NCBI GenBank assembly: GCA_002104905.1
Contig: MCFE01000536.1
Span: 1-60,924, forward strand
DNA: 60,924 nucleotides
Origin: Basidiobolus meristosporus CBS 931.73
Lineage: Eukaryota > Fungi > Basidiobolomycota
Direction: 5' to 3'
Below, piece by piece: positions 1,728-58,701 of the stretch. The position numbers and the translations under genes were made by a program. The notes below the pieces were generated by a model that searched no databases, was not told the DNA's origin, and worked only from the letters and a program-made list of their open reading frames with translations. Numbering within the stretch: the stretch's first letter is position 1; every line of letters begins with the position of its first letter.

Positions 1728-3182
1728 ATGCCAGTTCTACCTCCACAGTGTGTACAGCGAATTCTGTCTTGGCTATCCGATGACTACGTTACTCTTCATA
1801 ATGCTTCAAGTGTGGATAGACTTTGGTGTTCCCAGGCACTATTCCTCTTGTATAAACATCCGTGGAAGTACTTTCCTGAGGAGTTTACTCTCAGCAACGT
1901 ATCTAATATGAACTACTCTTTGGTAAATTTCCGCATTGCGAAGCTATGCCAAACACTCATCAACTGTGTACCACCACACTCTTTGAAAGATTTGGATCAG
2001 TGGGATATCATTCGAGAAACAAATTCCTTTACACCTCTGGTAGATTACCTTGGGTATTTGCGCGAGCTAGACTTAATTTGGTTGATGTCTATTTCATGGA
2101 ACACAAATTCTGATCTGGTCAACGGAACTTTAGATTTTTGTCAGTTCTTTATCAGTATAGAGGTCGCTGAGATATTGGCAAAATACCTATGGATTACGCA
2201 TGGACATAGAATTCGCAAGCTCGTCCTTTCCCGTTCTATTCCTCTTGAGCAATTTCTTCCACTCAGCACTCATACATCACTCACTACACTCGACATTGAG
2301 CTTGTTAGCTTCAAATCACTTCACGCAGAGCTTATCAACAAGGCCTGCAGCAATCTGAAAACACTGAAAATCATAGCTACCGTTGTTGATGACATCGCTG
2401 TTGCAAAAGTCATTGCACACCAAACCCCGGGAAGCATCAGAAAACTCGTTATCCGTTCCATGGAATCATATTCAATCCATCACACAATCGACACATTATT
2501 AGAGTACCACTACAAGAGTATTACACATCTAAAGCTCTCGATGTGTATATTAACTTTGGTAGAGCCTCAAGACAAATTCCTCTTCAATTCCGCTTTGTCG
2601 AAGCTGAGCCAATTTCCCAATCTCATTTCGTTGAAACTAGCGGGTTGGAAGCTTGCTGATGATGAGACCATGCTTACTGTCGCACACTCATTCCATAAGC
2701 TACACAAACTTCGACTCGAAAACGTTCCCTTCACCTCTAACACCATTGAAGCAATTGTGCGCGCAGCTGGCAAAAATTTGCTTCAATCAACCATTCTTAT
2801 AGACAACCAAGAGCTTGGTAGGGTGTTGCCAGCCTTAGGCATACATTGTCCTAATATTCGCTACTTGGATATTCAGAAGATGCGCTATCAGTCTAAGCAC
2901 CTTTTGCAATGCCTGAAATCGTGCGGCAGCCTCAAAACGCTCAAATTAGGCACGATAGAAAGCATGGATCCTATGGTGGCAGATCGGGTGGTATGCGGCA
3001 TTGCTCATTCCCTTAACGAGCTTGAACACCTGTATATGGGACAATCGAAGATATCCGAGGCTTCTCTTCATCACCTTAGCACTCATCCCAACCTGAAGTG
3101 CCTACGACTCAACCCATTTGCATACACTTTTTCTCCTGAGAAAGCACAAGCTCTTCTTGAAGGTAGGGTATCCATGGCTTGA
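1728..3182 (+). CDS. F-box-like / leucine-rich repeat (RNI-like) protein, intronless, 484 aa
   Basis: N-terminal F-box-like motif LPPQCVQRILSWL...VDRLWC..ALFLLYKHPW, followed by LRR-type repeats (LxxLxL: LTTLDI, LKTLKI, LISLKL, LHKLRL, LKTLKL, LEHLYM). Confidence 0.8.
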   Translation: MPVLPPQCVQRILSWLSDDYVTLHNASSVDRLWCSQALFLLYKHPWKYFPEEFTLSNVSNMNYSLVNFRIAKLCQTLINCVPPHSLKDLDQWDIIRETNSFTPLVDYLGYLRELDLIWLMSISWNTNSDLVNGTLDFCQFFISIEVAEILAKYLWITHGHRIRKLVLSRSIPLEQFLPLSTHTSLTTLDIELVSFKSLHAELINKACSNLKTLKIIATVVDDIAVAKVIAHQTPGSIRKLVIRSMESYSIHHTIDTLLEYHYKSITHLKLSMCILTLVEPQDKFLFNSALSKLSQFPNLISLKLAGWKLADDETMLTVAHSFHKLHKLRLENVPFTSNTIEAIVRAAGKNLLQSTILIDNQELGRVLPALGIHCPNIRYLDIQKMRYQSKHLLQCLKSCGSLKTLKLGTIESMDPMVADRVVCGIAHSLNELEHLYMGQSKISEASLHHLSTHPNLKCLRLNPFAYTFSPEKAQALLEGRVSMA

Positions 3183-4252
3183 TCTATATACACTTTTAGA
3201 GCCACTCGACTATAGACTGAGGAGCATAGCATCCATAATTAGCTCCACATGCCATTATGGTGAAATGATGTGCAGTGGGATGATTTGAGCACTGCTGCCT
3301 GCTAGTTTATTTTTATCATGTTTATAAATGGCACAACTGATCTTCAAAACAGCATCTCGTTCACTAATAATAAAGCTAATTTATAATATACAACACATGA
3401 GAGCATAACCCGAAAAAGTAGGCAATATATCCCAACACACCATTTAGGAACAATGGTCATTCGGTTCAACTGACTAGAGATTTTACCCCCATGTCTGCAT
3501 CACCAACTGCACCGGCCCTCCGCCCCAGTGCCACAATAAAGCACCTGTTGCTGAAAAATTTACTAGGTCGACAGTTGGCCAGGTCATGCTAGTTCGCCTT
3601 GACCCAAGGTCAATGTTGGCGTTTATGTGGTGTATCTAACACCGCAGGAATAAGGTTTTGGAGCTAGAGGGGTGTACGAACATCCATTCTGAACACAGTT
3701 GATGTTTGATCAAGATTATTAATAGATGGCCCAACGGCAATTAATTTCATATTGCAGACTTGGGGTCGATGGCGGGCAGAATCAGTACTGCATGAGATGT
3801 GAAACCAAATAAGGATGTGGGCGAATGAGCGAATGAGCACTTGAGCTCAAGGAAAGGAGTGACCTGGTAATGCCAAACCAGACAGATTCCCTAGTGCCTA
3901 AAGCAGGTTTGCCATACTGTCTGTCTAGATTGTATTTTTGGGATGCGATTTCGCCCATTCTACATTGCATTAATTTGCAACCATGTGTGAGTCGTGATTC
4001 AGCGTAGGTTCCAATATGAACGGATACTAGAGAGGCCTATGTGATAGCCTCGCGACACCAAGTTTCGTTTTAAGCCCATAATGGGATATGTAGTCGCTAA
4101 TGCTATCAGGGGATGTGGTGGGGACGAAAAGCGACGCATTCATATCCATATAAAAACCGCACGCTTGCTCAGTCTTGGTGGCAACACCGATTCTACTTCG
4201 AAACTAGGCCGTACTCTGGAGGCATAATACGGCCCAAAGCTCATCCCGAACC

Positions 4253-5266
4253 ATGATACTACAGTGGGACTTGCTAAATGGTATTCGTCTGGTCACCGAT
4301 GCAATCTCTCTTTTGGTATCTGCCATAGTGCTCCTGATCATCGTTGGGATACGTATCTATCGCAAGGATATGGCGGATCGAGTTTCATTGCGACTCACTG
4401 CTTTAGTGACTGTCAGCGACCTCTTGTTCCACGTTAGTTTGATCTTGGTAGGCGTTTTGGATGATCGAAATATTTGGAAGGTTTTTCGATGCTTGAGCTA
4501 CGCATTTTTGACTACAAGTATTTTGTACACCGCTTTGATTACTCTCAACCTTCAGTTGGTGCTGCTGCACCATTGGAGGCATACTGACAGATATCAGCTA
4601 GTGTACTACCTGGCTCCACCAATACCTGCGCTTGCTTTGGCGATAACTTGCTACTTTCTCCCGTGGACTACCCTTGCTTTCGGTGCCACCAGCGTGGATG
4701 TTGTAACCTTGGGCCTGACCATTGTATTTCTGGTGGTAATGGTGTATTCGGCCGCAGTTTGCTTCACCATCATTCATCGCCTCCGATTGGCCACGAGGTC
4801 ATCAGGAAGCATGGACAGCTCTCTCAGCTCAGGAGTAAAGAACCCCAAGGTCCTATCGCGGGTAGTAATTCGCATATCCTTGTACCCATTTATCCTATGC
4901 GTGGTTGGGATCCCGTTTATATTCATCATGATAATCCAGCTATCCTCGCGAACGCTTTACTATTCGAGCTCCTATTACATCTGTGAATATAGCATCGCCT
5001 TGCTTGGTATACTTAACGGGATTGCTTTTATCTATGATCCAGTGCTCTACCACTGCTATTCGCAAATACGAACGGAGTTGATTACTCGATACAGGGTTGA
5101 GGAGCAATACATAACGCCGGGCAAATTCAACCTTCGACGATGGCTAACAAAGGCCGTTTTTCATCTCGATCATGAGCGCTCGCAGAGTCCAGGCGATAGC
5201 AGCAAGGACGATAGTCTGGACTGGCAGGGTAGCGTGAAAGATGAGACAACACTGCGGTTGATCTAG
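4253..5266 (+). CDS. Seven-transmembrane receptor, cAMP-receptor/Git3-like GPCR, intronless, 337 aa
   Basis: Seven hydrophobic segments with RVSLRL before TM2, RISLYP in TM6 and GILNGIAFIYDP in TM7, as seen in fungal class VI-like GPCRs. Confidence 0.75.
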   Translation: MILQWDLLNGIRLVTDAISLLVSAIVLLIIVGIRIYRKDMADRVSLRLTALVTVSDLLFHVSLILVGVLDDRNIWKVFRCLSYAFLTTSILYTALITLNLQLVLLHHWRHTDRYQLVYYLAPPIPALALAITCYFLPWTTLAFGATSVDVVTLGLTIVFLVVMVYSAAVCFTIIHRLRLATRSSGSMDSSLSSGVKNPKVLSRVVIRISLYPFILCVVGIPFIFIMIIQLSSRTLYYSSSYYICEYSIALLGILNGIAFIYDPVLYHCYSQIRTELITRYRVEEQYITPGKFNLRRWLTKAVFHLDHERSQSPGDSSKDDSLDWQGSVKDETTLRLI

Positions 5267-13485: not shown

Positions 13486-15979
13486 ATGGGCTTGACTTCC
13501 TCAAAGGCTGTACCTCAGTTTGAAGCAGATAAGGAATTAGTTTATGACGAGCGTGATAAAGATACTCCTGATAATTGGATCCCTCGACATCCATCATTAA
13601 TAAGAACCACCGGAAACTATCCATTCAACGCGGAGCCCCCTCTGAAACGGCTTCAACAAGATGGTTACATAACCTCAACCGCGCTACATTACGTTAGAAA
13701 TCATGGTTATGTGCCTCGACTGGACTGGGATACACATACATTAGAAGTTTTTGGGTATGATTCAAATTCGTTATTACCACACTTTTTGCGCATTTTTTAG
13801 GAGTGCATTACGTGCTCGTAATATACTAAACTTCCCCATTTCGCTTAGGCTGGTTGGTTTATCCAAAACATTCACCATGGAGGAAATAGCCTCCTTTCGA
13901 AAAATAGAAATTCCAGTCACGCTATCCTGTTCAAGCAATCGCCTCAAGCAACTGATATCACAGAATTCACAAAACACCATTTGGAAAAAGGTCGCGTCTA
14001 GCACGGCAATGTGGGGAGGCGTCTATTTAAAAGATATACTAAAGAGCTGCGAAATCGATATACCAACAGAAAACGAATCTTGGTTTGTGCATTTTGAGGG
14101 CTGCGACCAACTCCCTAACGGCCTGTACGGTACCTCCATCGCCCTCTCCCATTGCTTGGATCCCGACCAGGAAATACTCTTGGCTTATGAAATAAACGGC
14201 GAACGACTAACGCCAGATCATGGATTCCCACTACGCGTCATCGCACCGGGATATATCGGTGGACGTATGGTGAAATGGCTGAAGCGTATATTTATTTCCA
14301 ACAAAGAGAGTGACAACTGGTATCACAAGCACGAGAATAGAATTGCCTTAAGCATCCCGGAGGAAATCGCTCAGGAGGACTTTCCCATCAATCAGCTCTC
14401 AACCATAGCCATGCTGTGCACTCCTTCTCACAAAGAGGTAATTCATATGACTCGAGGAGCATGTACTCTCCGAGGCTATGCATATGCTGGGGACGGGAGG
14501 AAAGTCACGGCCGTTGAGATATCCTTCGATCAAGGGCAAAGCTGGCATTCGTGCAATATCTATCCTCAGCAATGCTCCCCAAATACCAACAAGTATTGGG
14601 CATGGGCATTCTGGTCATTTACGGTTCTAACATCCGACCTCGCGCACGCGGAAGACATCCATATTCGAGTCTATCCCTTTGAATCATCTTTGCAGTTTTC
14701 CCGAAACGACTATCAGATAGCCAACATTGCTGTTGAGATAGATCGTCACCAAGATCAACTGATCCGATTTCTCCACCCGATTTCCCAAGTCGATAATTCT
14801 GGATGGCTAGAGCAAGCAACTAATCTAAAAAAGAAGCGCAATATGGACCCGCCTGATGACCATGAAGGCAGCCCTAGACTCAAGAAAAGGTGCATCATCC
14901 CTAGGCCGAAGGTATTCACAGCAGAGGATGTCGCGCGCCATTTCAAACCAGACGACGCTTGGGTATCCATCTATGGACGCGTATATGACTGTACGGATTT
15001 TATGAAAATCCATCCTGGTGGCATGGAAACCATAGCCGCCAACGCCGGGACGGATTGTTCCCGAGAATTCGGAGACATTCACTCGCCAGGCGCTATCGAG
15101 ATGTTGGAGCCTTACTGCGTTGGTCGTCTTGCCGACGCCATTCCTCATGAGCCAATCTTGGAGCCGTTTAACCCAAACGAGTTGGTTGCTCTCTCTCCAC
15201 TAAAGTACAACACCTTCCCTCTTATCGAAAAAATCACGCTGAACAAGGATACTCGTCTCTTCCGCCTTGGACTTCCTTCACCCAAGCATCGGATGGGCCT
15301 TCCTCTTGGGAAGCATATCCTACTCCGCGCCAAGATCAATGGAAGGACCACCGTGCGTGCATATACGCCCGTTTCTACCGAAGCCGATCTAGGACATCTC
15401 GATCTGGCAGTCAAAATATACTACAAAGGAATGCATCCAAAATATCCGAACGGTGGTAAGTTCTCGCAATATCTAGACTCGCTCGAAATAGGAGACACAG
15501 TAGAGGTGAAAGGCCCGATGGGGGAGTTCAATTATGATGGTCATGGTCACTATCGAGTCGAACGCAAACACCTCAAGGGGCAGGCACAAAACTTTGCTAT
15601 GATTGCTGGCGGAACTGGCCTTACCCCCATGCTGCAGCTGATTCGCGCCATCCTGAAGGACCCTTCTGATAACACCAAACTCTCTCTATTGTTCGCGAAC
15701 AAGAGCGAGGAAGATATCCTGCTTAGAGAAGAGCTGGAGCGATTGACTCGCAAATACCCCGAGCAATTAAAAGTGTGGTATACAATAGATGAAACCTACC
15801 TTTCTGAATGGCCCTACAGTACAGGCTTCATAACATACGAGATGATCCGCAATCACCTGCCGAAACCCGAAGAAAGTACTGTAGTACTAATGAGTGGACC
15901 GCCGCCCATGCTGAAGTTTACCTGCATCCCCAATCTAGAGAAACTCGGATATGATCTCGAAAAGTGTTTTACTTTCTAA
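13486..15979 (+). CDS. niaD-like: Eukaryotic assimilatory nitrate reductase-architecture protein (Moco, dimerisation, cytochrome b5, FAD/NADH domains), divergent; 2 exons, about 799 aa
   Basis: Phase-2 intron 13755-13848 joins ...HTLEVFG|LVGLSKTFTMEE. Motifs: HYVRNHG, NGERLTPDHGFPLRVIAPGYIGGRMVKWL, WAWAFW, b5 HPGG...DIHS, RAYTP, AGGTGLTPM, GPPPM. Confidence 0.9.
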
Positions 15980-16603: not shown

Positions 16604-17708
16604 CTACTTTTGGCAAAGACTAGGCAATTGTGAGTACTGGTCGAGAAGCTGAGTGGATGCATCTATTTTCGAGCAATTAGCCAAAAATCATTTGCTGGGC
16701 ATATCAGATTTGAATTCACGCACCTTCAATGTCACTGAAATCCGCATCTACCAATTTCCACCAGCTGCGTCCAGAGAGGGATGGCATGCTTTCTTCCAAA
16801 AATTTGGAGGCTATGTAGAGTGCAGACGCGGCAATGATATGAGGTGGGTAGATGATACACAGTACGGTGCGCAGACTAATTCACGTAAATATCTCAGGGG
16901 AATGTCTCAGTAAAATCGCAAAATAGGTCTGCTTACCTGTCATTGATGAAAGCCCACGCGGTCTGTGCAAGCTTTTTCGAGCCTATAAATACATATCTTA
17001 GTGCTGATGGACAAACACTGTGGGGACACCGTTGCTTACCCTGAAGCTCTTTGACTAAACTAAGTAGTATTCTATATGGGTGCTCGATAGCCAACTCGAA
17101 GCAGAGAGCCTCTAACAGAACCTCTTCGTTATATAAAATGGTATCTCTCCACCTCCAAAATTCCTAAGAGGGCTTAGAATATGCTCGTTCAATCCCTGTA
17201 TTAGAAGTATATAAACTACCTTCGAGTCTTCCTCTAGAATCAGCTTATCGTTTTTCTGAGCCTTCTGGGCACATACAATAATGATGTCGCGTAATTTCCG
17301 CCCCGTTTCCTCAATTTTGGCGGCAAGTAAAATGCAAGTGGCACCGATGTCCTGGAGAAAACAATCAATTTAAAGCCTACTTGAGGACCGATAGGGTCGA
17401 AGTCTTACATAATAATGGAATTCCTTCAAAGAGTGTCGAACATAAAATCGATGGAAGTAAACAGTGGCAGTTGCAAGGGTGGACTGCGGCCTTCGCAGGG
17501 TAAGAATAGTGAGTATTTCGTTATGGCAACAAATATACACAAGCTTGACCTACAATTTTAGAGTCATTCCAACATTCAAAATAAAATTACATCCTTTGGC
17601 ACGATCGATAATCTCTTTTTCATAGGAGATGCCATCAAAAGAGGACGGTGTTTTATAAAGCTCCTCTTTCTTGAAGTACCATTGCAAAGAACGGGATGAC
17701 ATGGTCAT
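16604..17708 (-). CDS. Transcriptional cyclin (Pch1 / cyclin K-T family), about 7 short exons, not visible in the ORF track
   Basis: Manual splicing gives MTMSSRSLQWYFKKEELYKTPSSFDGISYEKEIIDRAKGCNFILNVGMTLKL|PQSTLATATVYFHRFYVRHSLKEFHYY|DIGATCILLAAKIEETGRKLRDII...|EFWRWRDTILYNEEVLLEALCFELAIEHPY...|SKKLAQTAWAFINDS|LRTVLCIIYPPHIIAASALYIA...WW, stop at 16604-16606. Confidence 0.9.
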
Positions 17709-18280
17709 TTAGAGGTCTGAACAGTGTCGCTGCTTCACCTAAACAAGGACTGCATTTTGGATATTGTACGTGGTAAAGTGGGACCACTTTTTTTTCTTCC
17801 ATAGGAGGAAAAAAAATCTCGGTTACTACTAAATTGTTTACTAATCAGAAAGTTACAGGAACAACTGCATAAGCTCATCAAAATTCGAGAAATCGGCATA
17901 TGTTGGTTGGAATTCACGATGCAGAGATAACATCAGAGTACAACATTTCCAGAAATACTGAGGTAATACATTTACTTGGTGGCCATGGTATTGAGGACCA
18001 CAACAGTATACAGATCCATTGTTGCTAATCTACCTGATCGATGCCCAAACCCTGATTGAACTGGATGATAGAAATATACCCAGATATATCACCCACGACG
18101 CAAAATACATGCATGATTTGTCGTTCTCTCGATTCAACTGCCTGTAACGAAGACTGACCAATGCTAGGAAACAAGGTTTACCATGTATGGGGAGACCCTG
18201 GGAGAGTGTACATTATAATCCGACAATTTTTATTAATTAGTGGGATCTGATCTAGTGTTCTAACAACAATAGGTATGGAT

Positions 18281-18863
18281 TTATTGAGTCTTGTTCATCT
18301 CATCGATGACAGCGTTGGCCTTGGTAGTAACTTTACCGAACATGGCATCAAGGCACCCCTCGTGCTTCAAGAAAGCTGGGCGAAGGAAGTTCTTATAAAC
18401 GTATTGGGCACCCATGAATTGGGGAAGAAGCAACCAAAGCAAGGCAGCCAGCTTGAAGAGGTAATAGAATGGGAACCAGTACAACAGGGCGTCAGCAAAG
18501 TATTCGGCAATGTTGACGAAACCGTACACAGTCCAGTAGGTAAGCCATTGGGTGTCGTCCTCCTTGTCGCGGGATTCAATGGCCTTGAAAGAGGCGTAAG
18601 CTAGAAAAACGAAAACTCATAAGGTTAGAATGAGAGGGAGAGTTGGTATATGCCAACAGAAACTTACCGGGATAAACCCAACCAACGACATTAGTAAGAA
18701 GGGAGGCGGCGATGTTGAGGAAAACGAATAGGACAAAGACAAAGCCGATACCGGCGACAGCGTAGGTCTTATGGATTCCAGTCTTTTGCTCTACCTTTTG
18801 GAAGATAGGATACTTGGAAAGCTCTTGATCAAGCAAGTTCTGGTAGTGTTGGACCTTATCCAT
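18281..18863 (-). CDS. YOP1: ER-shaping protein Yop1/REEP5 (TB2/DP1/HVA22 family), 2 exons
   Basis: MDKVQHY...GWVYP|AYASFKAIES..KEDDTQWLTYWTVYG...WFPFYYLFK...LPQFMGA, the family signature motifs. Confidence 0.93.
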
Positions 18864-20669
18864 TTGAATGGAGTGTAGTGTGAAGAAACAAGTGTAGGAT
18901 AATGGTCCAAGCAGAAAATTTTGAAATTTATACCAGTTTTTCCGAGGGCAATTACCATGGCTTATGACAAGATCTACAAGAAACGTTAACCCCGTCAGTT
19001 CCAATTATACGGAGTCAATTAGATTTGCTATCTCAAGAAATTGTAGCACCGCCTGCTTCCAATTCTGGATAAATCATAGCTGGACCTGATTGTTTTGATT
19101 CTAGCTACGTTTGTTTGTTCAGATAAGCCTTGATGTGCGAAGATGCAACCACAAGAGTTGCATTGTCTCGTAGGAGATCAGGTTCCTGGAAATGATACAT
19201 CGGTGCGCACAGAGAGAAGGAGTAATGCGTTCTTCAATACTGACATCGTTGGTCGGGTTGCGGTGGACTTTGAATATCATGTAGTTTTGTAATACTAAAA
19301 GCCGATCAAACAGGTTGCTAGCGAATTTTCTGATCACCAATTTTCACGTGAAAGTGGTCAATGGAAGGGTATCCACAAAGGCTATAGGTCCAATGTGACC
19401 AATATGGTAACGGTGGGAGATACCATCATCTTGATATATATACATGAGGGAGATAACCGTTGTAGTCGTAAACAGATTGCCTGGTAGATTCACCATGGAA
19501 CCGCCTGGCAGTACTACACTAATATGGTTATATTTCAGATGGGTTTACCTATACCCTGCTATTAATAATAATAATCCTTGGGAACCTGTCCGATTGGACC
19601 GCAGTCTCATAAGCCGGGTAACGCGAAATCTATGCAAAATAGCCATTCATGTTAAGGAGGGTTAGGTTTCCATTAATGACCAGTCTGGGTAGGCGCTGCC
19701 AATGCTTCAGCGAAACTTATCAGAGCCTCCAGAATCCATGCTCCCATACTGACCTTAGAAGCTGTGAAGAATATTGCTCAAGATGTGCATACAACATAAA
19801 AAATAGATTCAATTGGCTGGATGATTGAGGAGACCCGTAATATGTGGGTGTCACAAAATTGCAGTAACATACAGGGCCGTCACCAGTGAAATCAGCCCGG
19901 TGGGTTTTGTGCACACACTTATACCGGTCTAAGGAAATGCATATCAGGTGTTTGTCACGTCTGATTCGATACCTTCATGGGATCTTGCGATTTTCATATC
20001 CAACAGACCTTGACTATGAGAACTCCTCGTTTCTCACGGAGGTATGTAAATGTCGCACTGGATTTCATAAATCGGGCTTGATTTGCAGATTGGATTCAAC
20101 CTGCACGATCTCGTCCATCCTGATTAATCTTATTCCAAATTGATTAACCTAGTTACATTAGGGATTACTTCACCACTTTACAAATTAGATTTGATATTCG
20201 AAGCTGGTCATCTAGTTCAGATCAAATATTACACCAACGGAATGGCCACTTGAAAGATGGTCTCATTGATCATTGCTTTAGCACTGCAGAAATATATGAC
20301 GAGCGGACGTTTTTCTGAATTGATTCACCTAAACGATCTTTTCCAATATAGTTAGCAATTACAAGGAGTCACTAATTCAAGTCTCATATACTGCACTGAT
20401 ACAGATATACGTATGATTGCGGCAATGCTAGTGGCAAATATAGTAAGACAGAGGGGCGGTAGGTATTGTTGAATGCTCTGATCGACAAATTTAGAAATTC
20501 CAAGACTTCGACAGTGTTCTAAAGTAAATAATTAGATCGGTAATTTGATGAGCTTTGATTGGAGTAACTCATTCCTACATTTCCCTGATCTAGGAGATTT
20601 CATAAAGGAAATTCTTGTTACTTGGCTCACTTGTCTAATTTCACTGCTTTTCATGAATTTGACTGTGAC

Positions 20670-26661: not shown

Positions 26662-29600
26662 TTATGGAAGGGAGATCAGAAACAGTCTTTTGTTGTTGGC
26701 AAAGAAATCCTCGGAGGCTCTCGTTTGTTTGGAGACGTCTGAGCCGACTGAACCAGTGGTCGTTAGGTAGAGATCGGCGAGTAAAGGATGAAGGTCGTAC
26801 TGTTCAAGCTGAGCGAGTACGGTCTTCAGTTCTGTGTCATTTGCAAGCAGGTTACTAAATGCTAGTGCTCGAAGCCAGTGGTGAATGTGTGGTGTGTACC
26901 TGAGAGGAGGTCTTCCTCTGGTGAGACCTGTTTAGCTAAAAGGATAAGTGTAGCTATCCTGTACACTTCCAAGAATATTGATGCATGGCCAGTGAATCCA
27001 GACGGACCGAAATTCCTTGTCTTTGAAAGAAACAGGTTAGCCAGCTGGAACTTTCTTACGACCTGAGCCGGTGGTTTACCTGCTCCTTGGCTCTTTCTAA
27101 GCTGCCGATTAGCCGGCTCAGTTTGGCGACTGCCTGGCTTCCTTGATGGAGAATGAGGCCCCTTAGAGTGGGAGGAATGCCTTCCTGCTCTTTCAGTTTT
27201 GATACTGTTTCCTGGAGTACCTGGTATACCAGCTGGGTTTCAATCAGGTCCTCCTTGTAGATGTTCGGTCTTTCGGTGACGAAGAGCGTTTGGTTAGGGC
27301 TTAATTCCTCTGCTATGATGGTGTCTATCGGGAAAATCACAACAGATTGGTTTCATAACCTTGGGTGAAAATGCTCAGTTGATTGCGCTTACCAAATGGC
27401 TTTCCTCCGTTCAGAATCTCCAAATAGGCCATCATTAGTTGAGCTGAGGTAGGTTCAAGCTCAGCCGCGTTTCGAACGCATATTTCTGCAGCTCGCTCCG
27501 AATTCAAGGATGTCCATCCTCCTCCGATCTTTGACACGAGTTCGGCGCTTTCTTGGCGGATATCAATATCGTCATCTTGCAACAATCGGATAAGCACGCA
27601 ATAGATGTCGATCAGGATCGCGTTCTCTGCTTTGTCTTGGTTGCTTGTCCCACGCGCCTCCAGGGATTTCTCAAAGTACTGGATGGAGGCGAGGGCCGCT
27701 TCACGCAAAGATACCGACATGGATTCGTCGCTGTACCGGCCGACGTAGTCCGACCAGATTTTCGAGAACTCCATGACCTCTGTCCTCTCAAGTTCGTATT
27801 CGTCCTGATGAAGCCACATGTAGTTCACTAACGACCCAAGCAATGGTAGTGTGTACTCCACCACAGTTAATGATCGAGTGTTGCTCATCATGTCCATCAG
27901 GTGATTCCAAAATTCGCGGACATTGAAGCTGATGTCCTTGTTGCTGTGCGCTTGGATAATGACGGGGATGAAGTTGCTGTGTGAAAGCAGCTTGGTCTCA
28001 ATCTTGAAGCACTCGAGGTTTGCTTCACCGGCAAAGATCAGTTGAGCAAGTCTCAGCCACAAACGGGCCTTGGAAAGTCGGTATTCTTCCGAGCTCTTGG
28101 AGCCCTCGAGAGCTCGAGCAAGTGCTTGAAGAGTAGACAGCCGCACTTCGTAGTCCGAATCATTCAGCAATGTTGCGATGATGCCGTCCACATCCATTTC
28201 CGCATAATCCAAACCATGCACGATGGCTTGCATAGTGATGATCTTGGAGGCATGCTTGAGAACCAGATATCTACCGACATCGACGACTTCGCTGTCGACC
28301 CGGCGAGCGAACACATCCTCCAGGGCATATTGGAGTACATTCTTTCGAAGATCTGAAAACTCTTCTTCGGCCATGGCGACCAACTCCACCTGGCCTTGAT
28401 CCGTGTTGTCGCTTTGGATCCAAACAGGCTCGAACACGAATTCCGATATGATGTCGTAGAAGACCGCTCGAGTGATGCTGCACTTGTTGTCGCCGAGCAG
28501 CAGCTTCACCTTAGACCGGAACAGCTCGGCCACACAGGTGATCACGTTGCGGCGCACTTCGTGGTTCGCCACATGGTATAAGTGTCCTCGGAGGAGAAAC
28601 AGAAGCTGGACCAAACGCCCGTGAAGTTTGTTCTGTGACTGAATGTCTATATCTTCCCACAAGTGCACGATGGTTTTGACGAGGTCATTGGAAACTACCA
28701 AGGGGACAAGCGCACGCGCCGCCATCTCCCGTGTTTTGTAGATACACCCTCCTGCACATTCAAGAACCGCAGGAACGAAGCTCGACATCGTCAAGGCCGA
28801 ATCCTGCCCATCCATAACAGAGGGTTGTAGTCGCGAGAGTAATGTCAGGACTGGATACAGGCCAGGATGAACAGCAGAGGCGCTGAGGCCCTTCGACTTA
28901 AACATTTGCTCCACAGAGTATTTCAATTCCTTTAGTAAGAAAGGATGAAGCTTGGGGAACCGGGAGAAGAACTCCTTTCCGGTCAAGGTGTTCATGGAGT
29001 GGTGCTCGTCTTTGGTTTTCTTGGTTCCGAACGTTCTTTGTAACAGCGTGGAGAAGAGCATTACAGAACAGTTGCGGATCGCCCAACAGTCCGAGGAGAA
29101 CCCAGAGATAGCCAGCATGAAACCCTCCTCGACATAAGGCAGTGCGTTGGCGCCTTGCTTGGCATCCGAGAACATCGTCCTTAGAATGTTGAATGCGTGC
29201 ACCTGAGGCAAATCATTGTTCAGATTGGCCTCTGCTGCTGGTGGTTCGCGGGCAATCTTGAACACCTCTCTCATGGTGTAGTTCAAGAGATGAGTGCTGT
29301 CAGCTGGTTCACTGCTGACAATAGCCAAAATACACAAGGGGATTCCCGCACTTCGGCGCGTCACCGAGACCGAGTTGGAGAAGATGTTCTTGAGATTCTC
29401 GTTGAGCCACGATTTGGGTACAGCTGAATGCTTGGAATCTGGGGCAGTCAGTAGTCTTGAGCAAACAGCAATGTAGCCTGGATACACGGCAGAGAAGGCT
29501 CCGCGATGTCGAATGGAGGTTAGCAGACTTCGAAGCAAGTCGCCACCTTGGATGACTTGTTCATATTCCATGATGGCAGGAAGATTGCTGTTTCCGTCAT

Positions 29601-32600
29601 CCAAGGGAACTCGAGAAAAGAGTACGCTCAGTAACGTGCTCGCTTCTTTAACGGCTCTCCACGAGTAGCTTAAGATCACCTGGCGTTTGGGACCAATGCT
29701 TTCGTCGTCCAGTGGGAGCTCATCCTCATTTACGCTTTCCATCTCCTGGAGAGACACGGGTGTGTTGTTTTCGGTTGAAGGGTTCGATAACACATCGAAG
29801 ACGGTGAAGCAGACAGAATTGACCAAGTTTAGCGTACGTGAATGGACCTGTCGCCAAGTCTCCGCGTTGTCTTTGATCTCCGGGGAGGAATAGTTGATGT
29901 CCTGGAAGATGTACATCAAAGCCATGAGAGTTCCATGAACTGGGTAGTTCTGCGCGGCATGAAGTAGATTCTGAGAGGCGGAGCGCAGCTGCTTTTCCAA
30001 CAGATTCAATAGTTTGATGGTGAAGTCAATCGAAGGAACACCGGTGAGATTTGAATACTCGGGCTGCTGTTCTTCAACTTCCAGGCAGAACCCGAGCTTC
30101 TCAACATACTTGGAAAATATCAGTCTAAAGACTGTTGCGCCACTGTTGCTCTGATTTGCACGATTGCTAGTCATGGCCTCGAAGCCCCACCAAAGGAGCT
30201 TTTGTACATGCTCGGTTGTTTCTATTCCCGGGAGAGGTGAAGGAAACAGGAACAGGATCTTTCTGACCATCTCTCGGTTGGCTTCAAATGGATTCATCAG
30301 TGCTTCCACCAGGATCTTACTGTTTCTTACAGTAGCGAGGGGGAGGCGGAAGGGGAGGCCAAGAGAATCCGAGTGTTCTTGGACAGATCCATTCGGTAAG
30401 GGAGCGTCGTCGATACCGAAGTACTTGATGAGGAGCTCAAAAAGTTTCAACGCGCTAGAGACACGCTGGAAAGATGCGCCGGGATACAGTGAGGCCATGG
30501 AAAGATCGCATAGCCAGACCAGCAACTCCTTGAGGTGGTTGATCTTCTCCGACAAAGAATCCAACTCCGTTTGCAGCGCGGGGTTCCCGGGTTTCTTCTG
30601 AAGCAACTTCTGCTTGGATTGAGATGTTCTCCACAGGCTGTAGAGATTTCCGCGAACTCGAATGAAAAACTTGGTTAGGTGGCCGTAGAGCTTCTGTCGA
30701 AATTCAGGAGAGGTGTGGTTCATATTGAGGGTGAGGAATTCCTGCAGCAAGTCGATCTCGTTCTTGGTAACCTCGGCGGTAACTTTCTGTGCCTGGCAAA
30801 GGAGCCCAAGCACATCGATTCTCAAATACAGGTCGCCGTGGTGAATAGCCTCAAGCAATATGTCAACACTGAGCTTTCTCTCGCTGGTTCTGGTAGGCCC
30901 GATGCGGAAGGAATGACCATCAATCAAATCCAAGGACTTCCCTGCCTTGATGACCGAAATCATTGCGTTCATGCAGAACTGAGGACATACCACGAATTCA
31001 GGATCCATTCCTTGCAGACCCTCGACAGCCAGCCAGAATGAGTCGGGGTGTGCCTTGAAAACCTTGTCCAACAGATAGTGCCCGACGTTCTTACGTAGAA
31101 GATCATTGTCGGAGGAGAGTGCTTGACATATAGGAGCAAGCCAGAGCTTGATATCATTGTCATTGATGGATACCTCTCTCTTGCGCTGCTCAATAAACGC
31201 AATAATAAGATGAGAGGCCCTTGGCGACAAAACCTGGTTGTGGAACACGAGAAGAGCCTTCGAGATCAAACTGGGGCATATTTCCAACAGCAGGGATGTC
31301 CCGACTTGGGGAAGCAAGGTTGACAAAAGGGCATATTTCACTTTGCGATACCAGTCCATCTCCATCAGTCGCTTGACAAGGTCGCTCAGGAATTGCGCGT
31401 GCCTCTCCGGCGAGTCTTGGGATTTGTTGTTGAGCTCACTTACCTTCAGGACGGTCTCGAAAAGATCCTTGACCTTTTGCTGCACAAGGTCGACCGGATC
31501 GTCCCAATTGTTCCAAACGTACGACAAGATATGTTGCTGGGTCTCATTTGCAAGAAGCTCATGCATATATTGAATGGTGCTTTGGAACAAAGCTCCATCT
31601 TTATAAATCGCCTTTGCAGTTTCGAACCACATGGTCAGGGTCTCAAATGCAAGCGCCTTCATATGGGATTCTAGGGAAGTGTCGCAAAACCCAATCAACT
31701 TCTGGAACATAATGCTATGGAGACAGTAATCATGCAACTGCAAAGAGCTAGCGTACGCATTTGGGTCGACCGACGAGGTTAGAGGTGCTGCACATTGGGT
31801 ACGGTGGTGAGGAGGCTTACCTATTTGAATGGATTCCAGCCACTAGTGTTGAAATACGTAGATTGGCCAAGAACCCTCTGTAGATTATAAGCTCCGTGAA
31901 GTCGCTGTGAGATTTCTCATTCAACATGTCAAAGTAGCCTTTGAAGTGGACATTCTTTAGGAGGGGCTCGTTGTGTTTATTTCCAGAGAACAGCTTAAAG
32001 ATCAAGGAGGCTACGCGTTCGGGAGAATCGACTAGATCCAACAGCGAGGCCAACGCCATAGCAGCAAGTGGGCCAAATTCTCTCGTGTATTTATCTGAGG
32101 TGCACATGGTGATGCAAGAGTTCACTGTATTCTCGTACACATTCACCGTCTTCTTTTGCTCTTCCTCGAGTTCTTCCTGGTTCAGGGTCGAAAACAATGT
32201 ACGGAAGAATGGGTCGTGACGAGACAGGAGCCCTAAGATCGTCTTAAGTAGGCTGTTGCAATCAACCACTTTATCCGAAAGAGCCAACACTTGGGTATCA
32301 CTGAACGAGGTTCTCTCGATCTCCGACAACGTTTCTCTCAGACAATCGCTCAAGTAGTAGAAGGTTGCTTCTAGATTCTCGCCAACAACTTTGGCGCCGA
32401 GTGGGAAATCCATGATGGCGTATATCGTATTCGCTTTGTTTGCATAGGATTGTTGATAGTATCTATCTCCCTCAATGTATCTCAGGTACTGTTGGCTGAA
32501 CAGCTCGTCCACATAGTCCTTCCTACTGAGGCCTCTACAAGCCTCGATTGTGGGGACACAATGTCGTTGAGAAATCACTTCCGTGGAGGAAAAATAAAGC

Positions 32601-46555: not shown

Positions 46556-48868
46556 ATGAGTCAATCTAGAGTTCAAGCGATCATGAACAGTGTTCACAGA
46601 CCTTCTCGTAAGGTCGAGTACCCCACCACCAACGGAAGAGGAATTTATCCTTCCGAATTCTATGGACAAAATGTGTTGACTCTTAAGGCTTTGTCCAAAG
46701 CTTTGCCCAAGCCAATCTTCGGCCAATTCCTCAAGCAAGTCAGAGGCCGCCAACATCTGGACAAAGTCACTGCCGATGCAGTTGCACATGCTGCTCGTGT
46801 GTGGGCCATGGAGAGGGGTGCTACCCACTACTCCCACTGGTTCCAACCTCAAACTGGCACTACTGCTGAGAAGCATGATTCTTTCCTGACCTTGAGAACT
46901 GGTCCTGCCGATGAGGTAAGACGTTCCTGCTCCCTTCCTCAATGACTTTCTATCTAATCATTCATTTCATAGGTCTTCGCTGTCGAGGCCCTCTCTGGTT
47001 CCCAACTTCTTCAATCCGAGCCCGATGCCTCTAGTTTCCCCTCCGGTGGTATGAGAACCACCTTCGAAGCTCGTGGTTATACCGTGTGGGATACCACCAG
47101 CCCCATGTTCATTCAACCAGGTCCTCACAATACCTCCGTTTTGTATATCCCATCTGTGTTCATTTCATACAATGGTGATGCCCTTGATGAGAAGACCGTT
47201 CTACTTCGCTCTTGTGAAGCAGTCTCCAAGGCTGCTTCCAGATTGTTAAATCTTCTCCAACCCGTTCCTGCTGGTGTCCCACCTCTCGTAAATCGCGTAC
47301 ACACCACCCTTGGTACCGAGCAAGAATTCTTCCTTGTTGATCGTGCCCTCTACGCACTCCGTCCTGATTTGAAGACCTGCGGACGTACTCTTATCGGCAA
47401 CCTTCCTCCCAAGCACCAACAAATGGAGGATCACTACTTCGGTAGAATGCCTACTCGCGTCTTGGCCGCTATCAGTGAGGTCGAATTGGAGCTTACCAAG
47501 CTTGGAATTCCCATCAAAACTCGTCACAACGAGGTTGCTCCTGCTCAATTCGAGGTTGCTCCTATCTTCGAGGAAGCTGTTGTTGCTGTCGATCACAATC
47601 TCGTTACCATGGAAGTTATTCATAAGGTTGCTCACAAGCACAATTTGAAGGTCTTGTATCACGAGAAGCCTTTCAAGGGTGTCAACGGATCCGGAAAGCA
47701 CTGTAACTGGGCTTTGTCCACTGATCGTGGTGAGAATCTTCTTGACCCTACTGTTAAGCCTGAAACCAACTACCGCTTCTTGTTGTTCTTGCTTGCTACC
47801 CTTCACGCTGTCCACAAGCACGGTGGCCTTCTTCGTGCTTCTATTGCCAGTGCTGCCAATGACCACCGTCTTGGTGCCGCCGAGGCTCCTCCAGGCATTG
47901 TTTCGGCTTTCCTTGGCGAGCACTTGAACGAAGTTTTGAACTCTATCGAGGAATCCCGCCCAGTCAAAACCTTCTCTCAACCTCATATCCAATCTATTAA
48001 GGTTGGCGGAACCGTCCTTGATGTCAAGGTCGCCTCCCTTCCAAATATCTCCCGCGATTTGACCGATCGTAACCGTACTTCTCCCTTCGCTTTCACTGGC
48101 AACAAATTCGAATTCCGTGCCGTTGGTTCTAAGCAATCACCTGCTTTCCCCGTCACTGTGCTTAACGCTGCTGTTGCTTCTGCTTTGGAAGACATCACCG
48201 AAGCCCTTTTGAAACAAAAGGGAACCAAGGATTTCGTTACCGATGCCGATAAGGTTGCCGTCATCAAGCAATTCATCACTTCAACCAAGCCTATCCGTTT
48301 CGAAGGTGACAACTATTCTGAGGCTTGGGCTCAGGAAGCTGAGAAGCGTGGTCTCCCCAATATCCGCAGCTCCGTCGAAGCTTTCAACCAATTGCGTCTT
48401 GATTCTCACAGAGACATGTTGATCAAGACTACTGGCGTCTTTACCGAATCCGAGTTGAACTCTAGATACCATATTCTCAACGAAAGATACTCCAAGGATG
48501 TGATCATGGAAGCCAATACCCTACGCACAATGGTCCAACAACAAGTGCTCCCCGCTGCTTATGAATACAGAAAGGAGCTTGCCACTTCTGCTGCCGCCAT
48601 GGCTGCCATCAATGTTGCTAGCGAGCCTGAGGTTTCACTCTTGAACCGCTTGAGCCCCATCCTTACTGACCTCCAATTGGAAAATGAAAATCTCCTTAAC
48701 CAAGTCGAGAAGGTCATGAACATGGAGCATGAAGAGCAACCTCAAGCCACCAGTGAAGTTATTGTACCACTTGTTGACCGCGTCCGTCAATTGTCCGACC
48801 AATTGGAGGATTTGGTTGCCGACAAGTACTGGCCTCTTCCCAAGAACACCGAGCTATTATTCTTCTAA
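46556..48868 (+). CDS. glnN-like: Glutamine synthetase type III (GlnN/GSIII), 2 exons, about 751 aa
   Basis: GATHYSHWFQP.TG.TAEKHDSF; intron 46916-46972; EPDASSFPSGGMRTTFEARGYT.WD.TSP; GTEQEFFL; HNEVAPAQFE; EKPFKGVNGSGKHCNW; NDHRLGA.EAPP; DRNRTSPFAFTGNKFEFRAVGS. Strong codon bias. Confidence 0.95.
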
Positions 48869-52047: not shown

Positions 52048-53022
52048 TCAGCTGAAGTTAAATCGATTGCGTGCATGATGGGAGGTGTTGTGTTGGTTAT
52101 GATGGGACCACATGGTTTTCCAATCACTTGGTAGAGGCTCGGATACGGAGTTTTCGGATCCTTTGCACTCCTTGTCGGTAATCTCGTCCCCCTCGATGGT
52201 GATGTGATAGCTTTCCAAACGGATGGGTGGTTGGAGGTCAAAGTTCTCGTTTTCCAGTATGTGCATCAGGTCGGACACGCGATTGGCGCTTTCGGGCCAC
52301 ACTTCGTCCGGGAAACAGCAGAGTAAGCGTCGTCTGATTCTTAGGAATTGGTTGAGGTAATCGTATTCGGTGCTATGTTTCCCAGCAAGCCTCATGATAC
52401 TACGAAGGCTGATCCCGTCATCGTTCTCGTATCCGTGCTGTAGCGCTGTGTCGTAGAAGATCAGTCTGCCGAGGTCGGAATGGATCCCGGCCTTGTTAGC
52501 GAGGTAGATGGCTGGCCGGAGAATGTTCTGATCCGCTACATCGACCTGAACCTGACGGAATTTCTCATCGCATGCTGCTTTCTTCCAGGCCTCTGTAAAC
52601 CCATACAGGTCAACGTCTTTCGGCTCGGTGTGGCAGCGGGTGGTGTTGGAGAACTCGTTGAGCGTGGGAAGGTACTTCTCAAAGCCGGTGGGCTGATCCT
52701 TCTTCACCTTCAAGTATTCCTGTATCACAGTCAGCGCTTCCCCGGCGGATGTGGTGAACCCAACGAACCCACAGGTATAACCTCGCTTGTCGTCGAGGTC
52801 ACGGCAGGATTGGTAATGGAAGTCGGTTCTGGAGTGCTCAAAAACATTCGATATCATCATGATGGTTTTCTTAGTGTCGGGCGACAATGGGGGGACATAG
52901 TAGTTGAAGCTTTTGGAAGGGATGCATGACTTGATGGCGGCCGTGAAGTTGAACACACCACAGTGCATGGTGGTGTTGGTATATGATCCCGCACAGTAAG
53001 GAAGACTCAATCCAGAGACCAT
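52048..53022 (-). CDS. GH46 chitosanase, intronless, about 324 aa
   Basis: ISNVFEHS (catalytic Glu), RDLDDKRGYTCGFVGFTT (catalytic Asp, Arg and Thr of the GH46 DGRGYTxG motif), FRQVQVD, YDTALQHG and YLNQFLRIR. Confidence 0.88.
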   Translation of the reverse strand: MVSGLSLPYCAGSYTNTTMHCGVFNFTAAIKSCIPSKSFNYYVPPLSPDTKKTIMMISNVFEHSRTDFHYQSCRDLDDKRGYTCGFVGFTTSAGEALTVIQEYLKVKKDQPTGFEKYLPTLNEFSNTTRCHTEPKDVDLYGFTEAWKKAACDEKFRQVQVDVADQNILRPAIYLANKAGIHSDLGRLIFYDTALQHGYENDDGISLRSIMRLAGKHSTEYDYLNQFLRIRRRLLCCFPDEVWPESANRVSDLMHILENENFDLQPPIRLESYHITIEGDEITDKECKGSENSVSEPLPSDWKTMWSHHNQHNTSHHARNRFNFS

Positions 53023-58340: not shown

Positions 58341-58689
58341 TGTTGTAAAAATTTGTATTTCCACCTAAATATTCACCTACATTAGTCACTTAGATCATCA
58401 CCTTCAAATCCTAGAGAATACTGACCAAATTCCTTGTCAGGATTTACTTAGAATATTTTCACCAAAATGCCAGGTACCCAGAACATGAAAATTCTCAAAG
58501 TTGTTCAAACAGCCCCAAACTTTGCACACATATTCTTGGAACCTTCCTTAACCTATTCTACGTGTTTGTAATGCCAAGACCAGGTAAAAGTATAAATACT
58601 ACTTTTACATTCAATAAATCATTAAGTGAAAACCACATAATCTACTTGTTCTCCCAATCACTTCCAATATCTCCAAGACTCTTACAACA
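58341..58689 (+). mobile_element. 5' LTR (349 bp) of a Ty5/copia-like element
   Basis: TGTTGTAA...TTACAACA 8-bp terminal inverted repeats; TATAAATA at 58591-58598; immediately followed by the PBS. Confidence 0.92.
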
Positions 58690-58701
58690 GGTTATGAGCC
58701 C
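58690..58701 (+). promoter_or_regulatory. Primer-binding site complementary to the anticodon arm of tRNA-iMet (half-tRNA priming, Ty5/copia type)
   Basis: GGTTATGAGCCC is the reverse complement of GGGCUCAUAACC in fungal initiator tRNA-Met, and it abuts the LTR's terminal CA. Confidence 0.88.

What the first reader, a model, noticed from the sequence alone, without database searches (positions are those of the whole stretch)
13849..14760. Nitrate reductase scaffold with a rebuilt substrate pocket
Seen: the Mo-ligand Cys is kept but CAGNRRKE has become CSSNRLKQ, so the Arg at Cys+5 is Leu. GFNWGAAA is NTIWKKVA, DNRVLP is ENRIAL, NINSVI is STIAML, and the WNxxGMMNN motif is absent (LQFSRNDY). 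Moco-contact motifs (HYVRNHG, DHGFPLR, PGYIGGRMVKWL) and the b5 and FAD modules stay conserved and in frame. Established: the Cys+5 Arg (Arg144 in Pichia angusta NR) and the GMMNN region shape the nitrate site. Inference: an intact electron chain feeding an altered Mo site, possibly a new substrate (nitrite to NO, N-oxide/N-hydroxyl or S-oxide) rather than nitrate.
Basis: partly seen in the sequence, partly recalled or inferred. Interest (0 to 1): 0.78.

Follow-up and report, generated by a model that had tools for sequence, protein, structure and literature searches.

The report
Nitrate-reductase paralog with dismantled nitrate pocket
A fungus (Basidiobolus) keeps, under strong selection, extra copies of nitrate reductase whose electron chain and molybdenum-cofactor site are intact but whose nitrate-binding pocket has been taken apart, so they probably do something other than reduce nitrate.

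Summary
The window comes from Basidiobolus meristosporus. The gene (13486-15979, + strand, one intron) encodes a 799-aa Mo / dimer / b5 / FAD / NAD(P)H protein. It keeps the Mo-ligand Cys and the Moco-contact motifs. The Arg at Cys+5 is Leu, the GFNWG loop is remodelled, and a 10-residue deletion removes the WNxxGMMNN element (P. angusta Met427).

This is a clade trait. Four genes share it: two old paralogs, each present in B. meristosporus and B. ranarum. The clade is sister to the canonical Basidiobolus NRs and has a very long stem (about 1 substitution per site) but short crown branches. No relative turned up outside the genus in either large protein search.

Decay is refuted. Synonymous sites are saturated, while dN is 0.09 in the Mo core and 0.02-0.06 in b5/FAD/NAD.

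"Rebuilt pocket" overstates the case. The former pocket segments are now hypervariable within the clade (20/87 invariant against 208/291 elsewhere, p 7e-16), and the sister paralog keeps the Arg. The pocket looks dismantled and opened, not re-specified.

The best reading is a Moco-dependent NAD(P)H reductase that no longer specialises in nitrate, substrate unknown. The main rival is an idle Mo site in a dedicated electron donor. The clade also gained an N-terminal myristoylation pattern and a bipartite basic hinge motif.

The parts
13486..13754 (+). Exon 1 (residues 1-89 plus 2 nt). It holds the N-terminal MGLTSSK and the Moco-contact motif HYVRNHG (13687-13707), whose Arg corresponds to P. 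angusta Arg89.
   Evidence: All four clade genes have their single intron at the same offset (269 nt, phase 2).
13755..13848 (+). Intron (GTATGA ... TAG), 94 nt. The public model P0001 instead uses the acceptor at 13800 and so adds 16 residues (SALRARNILNFPISLR).
   Evidence: The three homologs lack the 16 residues. AF2 gives pLDDT below 50 exactly there.
13849..15979 (+). Exon 2 (residues 90-799 plus the stop). It encodes the rest of the Mo domain, the dimerisation domain, hinge 1, cytochrome b5, hinge 2, and the FAD and NAD(P)H domains.
   Evidence: (Pfam PF00174, PF03404, PF00173, PF00970, PF00175).
13928..13996 (+). Active-site loop CSSNRLKQLISQNSQNTIWKKVA. The Mo-ligand Cys117 is kept and Leu122 replaces the Cys+5 Arg. 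The loop is one residue shorter, Trp135 is kept, and Gly136 has become Lys.
   Evidence: mapping onto 2BIH: C139, R144, W158.
14216..14326 (+). Conserved Moco-scaffold motifs DHGFPLR, PGYIGGRMVKWL and ESDNWYH.
   Evidence: 38 of 50 NR+SO-universal positions are kept in all four clade members.
14333..14416 (+). ENRIAL (in place of DNRVLP; the Asn equivalent to N272 is kept and Asp has become Glu), then a deletion of about 6 residues that removes the conserved WW, then STIAML (in place of NINSxI).
14666..14740 (+). RVYPFESSLQFSRNDYQIANIAVEI. RAWD and NTQP are lost, and a 10-residue deletion removes WNxxGMMNNxxF, including the equivalent of P. angusta Met427.
14828..14890 (+). Hinge 1 basic pair KKKR-x14-KKR, a bipartite NLS-like pattern conserved in all four clade members.
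   Evidence: (0 of 209 other NR-like proteins have it).
15011..15094 (+). Cytochrome b5 haem-ligand motifs HPGG and DIHSPGA.
   Evidence: 18 of 19 canonical-invariant b5 sites are kept.
15356..15910 (+). FAD/NAD(P)H module with RAYTPVS, GGTGLTP and SGPPPM. The invariant Cys of CGPPPM is Ser in all four clade members.

Best explanation
The gene is an intact, selectively maintained member of a Basidiobolus-specific clade of nitrate-reductase paralogs.

Shown:
- The clade arose by duplication of the lineage's own assimilatory NR.
- It passed through a burst of change concentrated on the elements that line the oxyanion pocket of all eukaryotic sulfite-oxidase-family enzymes.
- It was then duplicated again as part of a chromosomal block before B. 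meristosporus and B. ranarum split.
- It has since evolved slowly everywhere except in the old pocket segments.

Inferred:
- The protein still binds FAD, haem and Moco, and passes electrons from NAD(P)H to FAD to b5 haem to Mo.
- The Mo centre now sits in a wider, less positively charged and loosely specified cavity, because the Met427 loop is deleted, the Cys+5 Arg is lost in this copy, and the Cys loop is shortened.
- It is therefore no longer a dedicated nitrate reductase. It most likely reduces some other, possibly broad, set of oxygen-atom donors. This resembles the function of the mARC + b5 + b5-reductase system, but in a single polypeptide.

The substrate is unknown.
For: - Intact gene: the ORF is intact, with one intron at the same site in all four genes.
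- Domains: all five NR domains are found.
- Fold: the AF2 model best matches P. angusta NR 2BIH (TMq 0.80).
- Selection: dS is saturated in every pair, while dN is 0.09 (Mo core), 0.15-0.28 (dimer domain), 0.04-0.06 (b5), 0.02 (FAD) and 0.04-0.06 (NAD).
- Phylogeny: the clade is monophyletic (100/100) and sister to the canonical Basidiobolus NRs (100/100). Its stem is 1.1 substitutions per site and its crown branches are 0.05-0.13. The placement holds when the pan-fungal paralog clade is added.
- Canonical-invariant sites kept in all four: Mo core 53/66, b5 18/19, FAD 23/25, NAD 15/18, but dimer domain only 12/34.
- Lost family-wide sites: 12 of 50 positions universal to NR and SO are lost, and all lie in the pocket-lining segments.
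- Active-site mapping onto 2BIH: C139, W158 and N272 are kept, R144 is Leu, and M427 is deleted.
- Uniqueness: no other NR-like protein examined shares these losses, and there are no relatives outside the genus.
- Background: canonical NRs coexist in the genome.
- Analogy: mARC has a solvent-exposed Mo site, is promiscuous, and is fed by b5 and b5 reductase (PMC10637980).
Against: - Within the clade the former pocket segments are hypervariable (20/87 invariant against 208/291 elsewhere). A newly specific site would be conserved, so the data fit an unconstrained pocket as well as an open promiscuous one.
- The b5/FAD/NAD module, not the Mo domain, is the best-conserved part, which is the reverse of canonical NRs.
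- The invariant Cys of CGPPPM is Ser. From my memory of the b5-reductase and NR literature, this slows hydride transfer.
- There is no expression evidence, because no RNA run was listed.
- There is no biochemical evidence at all.
- The pocket could not be modelled, because the relevant loops have pLDDT below 50.
Confidence: 0.55

Rival explanations
1. The Mo centre is catalytically idle. The protein works as a dedicated NAD(P)H-to-FAD-to-b5 electron donor (a diaphorase, like a b5-reductase/b5 fusion) for a separate acceptor protein. The Mo/dimer domains are kept only as a folding and dimerisation scaffold.
For: - b5/FAD/NAD are the most conserved domains in the clade (identity 0.89-0.96), while the dimer domain is the least (0.63). 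This is the reverse of the canonical Basidiobolus NRs.
- The pocket segments evolve almost freely.
- There is a precedent: the haem and FAD domains of Chlamydomonas NR feed electrons to ARC independently of nitrate reduction (PMC10637980).
- The clade-specific N-terminal myristoylation pattern recalls membrane-anchored b5 reductase (the comparison is from my own knowledge).
Against: - The Mo-ligand Cys and the Moco-contact motifs are invariant in four genes across saturated synonymous divergence.
- 38 of 50 NR+SO-universal positions are kept.
- The Mo-core dN of 0.09 is close to that of b5. A mere scaffold would not need the cofactor ligand.
Confidence: 0.25
2. It is still a nitrate reductase (or a nitrite-to-NO reductase) with altered kinetics, for example a low-affinity or differently regulated isoform.
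For: - Full NR architecture is present and the gene sits inside the EUKNR tree.
- The equivalents of Arg89, Trp158 and Asn272 are kept in this copy.
- The sister paralog also keeps the Cys+5 Arg.
- A new Lys next to the Trp could replace lost positive charge.
- All eukaryotic Mo enzymes can reduce nitrite to NO to some extent (PMC10637980).
Against: - The whole WNxxGMMNN element, including Met427, is deleted and 12 family-universal positions are lost.
- No canonical or proven NR examined tolerates these changes.
- Four canonical NRs already exist in the genome.
- There is no nitrate-assimilation neighbour in the window or in the three related loci.
Confidence: 0.12
3. It is a decaying gene copy, that is, simple relaxation on the way to a pseudogene.
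For: Many conserved residues are lost, and variability is high in the dimer domain and the former pocket.
Against: - Four intact 795-800-codon ORFs share a conserved intron position.
- dS is saturated while dN stays at or below 0.28 in every domain.
- Crown branches are as short as, or shorter than, those of the canonical NRs.
- Positional orthology and synteny are preserved between the species.
Confidence: 0.03

Closest known systems
Eukaryotic assimilatory NAD(P)H nitrate reductase (EUKNR; e.g. P. angusta YNR1, PDB 2BIH/2BII)
   Same: - Same five-domain order.
- Same Mo-ligand Cys, Moco-contact motifs, haem ligands and FAD/NAD motifs.
- The predicted fold matches 2BIH best.
- It nests inside the EUKNR tree, next to the canonical Basidiobolus NRs.
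   Different: - The Cys+5 Arg is lost in this copy.
- The active-site loop is one residue shorter, with Gly changed to Lys.
- Asp of DNR is Glu.
- The WW segment is deleted.
- A 10-residue deletion removes the Met427 loop.
- The Cys of CGPPPM is Ser.
- New N-terminal MGxxxS and basic hinge motifs are present.
Pan-fungal EUKNR paralogue of uncertain function (Ocana-Pallares et al. 2019, PMC6400420)
   Same: It is an NR-derived fungal paralog that coexists with a bona fide NR and is thought not to act as a nitrate reductase.
   Different: - Likely members (chytrid, Endogonales, Trametes and Sordariales sequences) keep Arg at Cys+5, DNR and WNxxGxxNN. That these sequences are the paralogue described in the paper is my inference.
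- They form their own clade.
- The Basidiobolus clade does not join them. It branches with the Basidiobolus canonical NRs (SH-aLRT 100). It is therefore an independent and far more radical derivation.
Sulfite oxidase (chicken 1SOX, plant 1OGP)
   Same: Same Mo and dimerisation fold. The Mo domain scores as well against chicken SO as against NR.
   Different: - The SO-defining residues are absent. There is no Tyr at the DNR Asn position, and the WNxRG Arg lies in the deleted segment.
- Residues shared by SO and NR are also lost.
- The b5 domain is C-terminal to the Mo domain and is followed by a reductase module, as in NR.
mARC + cytochrome b5 + NADH-b5 reductase system
   Same: This is a functional analogy only. 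An NAD(P)H-to-FAD-to-b5-to-Moco chain feeds a Cys-ligated Mo centre. In mARC that centre is open and promiscuous (PMC10637980).
   Different: - mARC has a MOSC fold, not the SUOX fold.
- It uses three separate proteins, not one.
- No sequence relationship exists, and no activity has been shown here.

Membership tests
Eukaryotic assimilatory nitrate reductase (EUKNR) | Domain order: Mo-binding, Mo-co dimerisation, cytochrome b5, FAD-binding, NAD(P)H-binding | tested here: met
   Pfam. The dimerisation domain matches only profile positions 4-107 of 138.
Eukaryotic assimilatory nitrate reductase (EUKNR) | Mo-ligand Cys and Moco-contact motifs | tested here: met
   Cys117, HYVRNHG, DHGFPLR and PGYIGGRMVKWL are invariant in the clade.
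Eukaryotic assimilatory nitrate reductase (EUKNR) | Nitrate-pocket residues (P. angusta Arg89, Arg144, Trp158, Asn272, Met427). Their roles are recalled from Fischer et al. 2005, which is not held in the library. | tested here: not met
   The equivalents of Arg89, Trp158 and Asn272 are kept. Arg144 is Leu. Met427 and its loop are deleted.
Eukaryotic assimilatory nitrate reductase (EUKNR) | Phylogenetic position inside the EUKNR family | tested here: met
   Sister to the canonical Basidiobolus NRs, with support 100/100 and SH-aLRT 100.
Eukaryotic assimilatory nitrate reductase (EUKNR) | NAD(P)H:nitrate reductase activity | not testable with these tools
   This needs an enzyme assay or complementation.
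Pan-fungal EUKNR paralogue of uncertain function | Branches with the clade of distantly related fungal paralogs (plus Acanthamoeba) | tested here: not met
   The candidate paralog clade (P0218, P0232, P0214, P0302 and others) is separate. That these are the paper's clade is inferred from their taxa and was not verified against the paper's sequences.
Sulfite oxidase | Tyr at the position of the DNR Asn, and Arg in WNxRG | tested here: not met
   Asn253 is present, and the WNxRG region is deleted.

The most novel reading that the evidence does not exclude
The clade is a third catalytic type within the eukaryotic sulfite-oxidase family. It would be a self-sufficient, single-chain flavohaemomolybdo-reductase, possibly N-myristoylated, with an opened mARC-like Mo site. 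Such an enzyme would reduce N- or S-oxygenated compounds (or nitrite to NO) rather than nitrate, and would have evolved within one genus of gut-associated fungi.
Probability: 0.3. Interest if true: 0.75.

Novelty: new variant of a known kind. Interest (0 to 1): 0.55.

Why it matters
Eukaryotes are credited with only a handful of molybdenum enzymes, and only two of them (nitrate reductase and sulfite oxidase) use the SUOX fold. This clade keeps the cofactor site and a complete built-in electron supply, yet it discards residues that are invariant in both known enzymes. It has stayed under purifying selection across a divergence deep enough to saturate synonymous sites.

That makes it a natural experiment on what the SUOX Mo centre can do without its oxyanion pocket. 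It is also a tractable candidate for a new eukaryotic Mo-dependent activity, because a single polypeptide can be expressed and assayed.

There is a practical lesson too. Public records label these genes "nitrate reductase [NADH/NADPH]", and that name would inflate any inference about nitrate assimilation in Basidiobolus.

Tried and rejected
- **Expression and splice evidence.** The look-up of sequencing runs listed no RNA run. Read laying was therefore not run, and expression and the choice of splice acceptor remain untested.
- **Numerical dN/dS.** dS is saturated or undefined in all six pairs (NG86 and YN00). Only the bound 'dN far below dS' can be given. No codeml or RELAX was available.
- **Pocket modelling.** The AF2 model has pLDDT below 50 in exactly the remodelled loops, and the tool returns no coordinates. 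No cavity analysis was possible.
- **Literature.** Fischer et al. 2005 (PMC1087994) is not held, and residue-name searches found nothing useful. The residue roles are therefore from memory. They were cross-checked only by the consistent +10 mapping onto the 2BIH chain and by the PDB titles of the SO-to-NR specificity mutants 3R18 and 3R19. Nothing was found on Basidiobolus NR.
- **Rejected: membership of the known pan-fungal paralog clade**.
- **Rejected: a shift toward sulfite oxidase**.
- **Rejected: a hidden intron that restores the GMMNN motif.** The ORF is continuous and all four genes share the same deletion.
- **Rejected: a nitrate-assimilation gene cluster.** No NiR or NRT2 lies in the window or in the three related loci.
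- **Failed pattern.** One regular expression (the DNR pattern) was faulty and its count was ignored.

Full report
**1. Gene and organism**

The protein search identifies the window as Basidiobolus meristosporus CBS 931.73. The annotated product is P0001, named "molybdopterin binding oxidoreductase".

The gene lies on the + strand:
- exon 1: 13486-13754
- intron: 13755-13848
- exon 2: 13849-15979

The public model uses an acceptor at 13800 and so carries 16 extra residues. The three closest homologs lack those residues, and all have their single intron at the same offset and phase. AlphaFold also gives pLDDT below 50 exactly there. I therefore used the 799-residue model.

Pfam finds Oxidored_molyb, Mo-co_dimer (profile positions 4-107 of 138 only), Cyt-b5, FAD_binding_6 and NAD_binding_1.

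**2. The observation**

Alignment with the crystallised P. angusta NR (2BIH) places its active-site residues as shown below. The chain index plus 10 gives the native numbering. The roles of these residues are from my memory of Fischer et al. 2005, which the library does not hold.

| P. angusta residue | State in this protein |
|---|---|
| Cys139 | Cys117, kept |
| Arg144 | Leu122 |
| Trp158 | Trp135, kept, in a loop one residue shorter and followed by Lys instead of Gly |
| Asn272 | Asn253, kept, preceded by Glu instead of Asp |
| Met427 | inside a 10-residue deletion |

The Arg of HYVRNHG (Arg89) is kept.

The losses are not ordinary variation:
- Among the 207 other retrieved sequences, every post-Cys motif that my pattern recovered (188) has Arg at Cys+5. 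A GxxNN motif is present in 202 of 207.
- Across 50%-identity representatives of the whole family, no NR-architecture protein lacks the WNxxGxxNN element, and only one (P0233, which also lacks the ligand Cys) departs from Arg at Cys+5.

One correction applies. NINS is not diagnostic, because P. angusta NR itself reads NLQT there, and reads TSMLNN for GMMNN.

**3. A clade trait, not a single gene**

Four proteins share the remodelling:
- this one
- P0002 (B. ranarum, 82% identical)
- P0003 (B. ranarum)
- P0004 (B. meristosporus)

The window is collinear with the P0002 locus over the whole 14.5 kb fetched, so these two genes are positional orthologs. All four loci have the same cyclin and TB2/DP1/HVA22 genes downstream. 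The two paralog lines therefore come from a block duplication that predates the split of the two species.

All four share:
- the shortened Cys loop with Gly changed to Lys
- Asp changed to Glu in DNR
- the WW deletion
- the loss of RAWD and NTQP
- the 10-residue deletion

The Cys+5 Arg is Leu here and Thr in P0002, but it is retained in P0003 and P0004.

**4. Origin**

In a maximum-likelihood tree the clade (100/100) is sister to the canonical Basidiobolus NRs (P0005, P0121, P0122, P0006 and a partial B. ranarum protein; 100/100). Its stem is 1.1 substitutions per site, and its crown branches are 0.05-0.13.

Ocana-Pallares et al. 2019 describe a fungal EUKNR paralogue of uncertain function (PMC6400420). 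Likely members from a chytrid, Endogonales, Trametes and a Sordariales species keep the pocket motifs and form their own clade. The Basidiobolus clade stays with the canonical Basidiobolus NRs (SH-aLRT 100).

Two searches looked for relatives outside the genus:
- A word search restricted to the remodelled region found only the four clade members.
- An exhaustive profile search of 1.84 billion representatives found nothing between the clade's own representative (873 bits) and a canonical Basidiobolus NR (442 bits).

**5. Selection**

Synonymous sites are saturated in all six pairs.

| Region | dN |
|---|---|
| Mo core | 0.09 |
| dimer domain | 0.15-0.28 |
| b5 | 0.04-0.06 |
| FAD | 0.02 |
| NAD | 0.04-0.06 |

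Four intact ORFs with a conserved intron rule out decay.

Sites invariant in a 31-sequence canonical panel are kept in all four clade members as follows:
- Mo core: 53/66
- dimer domain: 12/34
- b5: 18/19
- FAD: 23/25
- NAD: 15/18

Of 50 positions universal to both NR and sulfite oxidase, 38 are kept. The 12 lost positions are G119, R122, G133, D252, S277, R311, A364, Q372, P373, W378, N379 and G380. All of them lie in the pocket-lining segments. The change is therefore a departure from the family-wide oxyanion pocket, not a drift toward sulfite oxidase.

**6. Dismantled rather than rebuilt**

Within the clade the four former pocket segments are invariant at only 20 of 87 columns, against 208 of 291 in the rest of the Mo and dimer domains (Fisher p 7e-16). 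In the canonical Basidiobolus NRs the same comparison gives 60/104 against 167/291 (p 1).

The order of domain conservation is also reversed. In the clade, FAD, NAD and b5 are the most conserved and the dimer domain the least. In the canonical paralogs the Mo domain is the most conserved.

A newly specific pocket would be conserved, and this one is not. The data fit either an opened, loosely specified site or a site that is no longer used.

**7. Other clade-specific features**

- All four begin MGLT[SN]SK, which matches the N-myristoylation pattern. Only 4 of 259 other full-length NR-like proteins match it.
- All four have two basic clusters in hinge 1, in the spacing of a bipartite nuclear-localisation signal. 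None of 209 others do.
- All four have Ser for the invariant Cys of CGPPPM.

These are pattern matches only. Taken together, though, they indicate a changed cellular context as well as a changed active site.

**8. Context**

No nitrite reductase or nitrate transporter lies in the window or in the three related loci. I did not check that note.

No RNA run was listed, so expression is untested and read laying was not used.

**9. Verdict**

The gene is functional, it is very unlikely to be a conventional nitrate reductase, and its electron chain and Moco scaffold are intact. However, the evidence favours a dismantled or opened pocket over a redesigned one. A non-catalytic Mo domain in a dedicated electron donor remains a serious rival.

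As far as these searches and the literature held here show, the clade is undescribed. It is a new, radical variant of a known enzyme kind, and so far it is confined to one genus.

Noticed in passing
window 13755-13848: The public gene model (P0001, 815 aa) uses a 3' splice site at 13800. That retains 48 nt of probable intron as 16 in-frame residues. Three homologs lack these residues and AF2 gives pLDDT below 50 there. The 94-nt intron is the better model.
   Followed up: partly
window 13486-13506: The N-terminus MGLTSSK matches the N-myristoylation pattern in all four clade members, but in only 4 of 259 other full-length NR-like proteins. The canonical Basidiobolus NRs start MIYK or MAFE.
   Followed up: partly
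window 14828-14890: Hinge 1 carries two conserved basic clusters (KKKR ... KKR) in a spacing like that of a bipartite NLS. They are present in all four clade members and in none of 209 other NR-like proteins.
   Followed up: partly
window 15893-15895: The invariant Cys of the CGPPPM nucleotide-site motif of NR and b5 reductases is Ser in all four clade members. It is Cys in every one of the 199 other retrieved sequences where my pattern found the motif.
   Followed up: partly
window 47051-48868 (+): A long ORF has type III glutamine synthetase domains (GSIII_N, Gln-synt_C, Gln-synt_C-ter). This GS type is found mostly in bacteria and is unusual in a fungus. It lies about 31 kb from the NR-like gene.
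   Followed up: no
window 52048-53022 (-): An ORF has a GH46 chitosanase domain, a family that is mainly bacterial. It may have been acquired by horizontal transfer.
   Followed up: no
window 27337-31743 (-) and 58562-59554 (+): A THADA/Trm732 homolog (DUF2428 plus TPR) and a copia-type gag ORF.
   Followed up: no
proteins P0005, P0121, P0122, P0006 (B. meristosporus), P0123 (B. ranarum): B. meristosporus carries at least four canonical-looking NR paralogs in addition to the two divergent ones. That is an unusually large NR family for a fungus.
   Followed up: partly
proteins P0218, P0232, P0214, P0302, P0224, P0240, P0251, P0272: A separate pan-fungal clade of NR-like proteins has CDGNRRKE or CTGNRRKE after the ligand Cys and HIWDNR / EQxLQS variants. 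It is probably the 'euknr paralogue of uncertain function' of Ocana-Pallares et al. 2019. It is still uncharacterised.
   Followed up: partly
window 16607-18983 and loci L001, L002, L003: The cyclin and TB2/DP1/HVA22 genes downstream are conserved at all four loci. Upstream genes at window 1728-5263 match L003. The NR-like paralogs therefore sit in a duplicated chromosomal block.
   Followed up: partly
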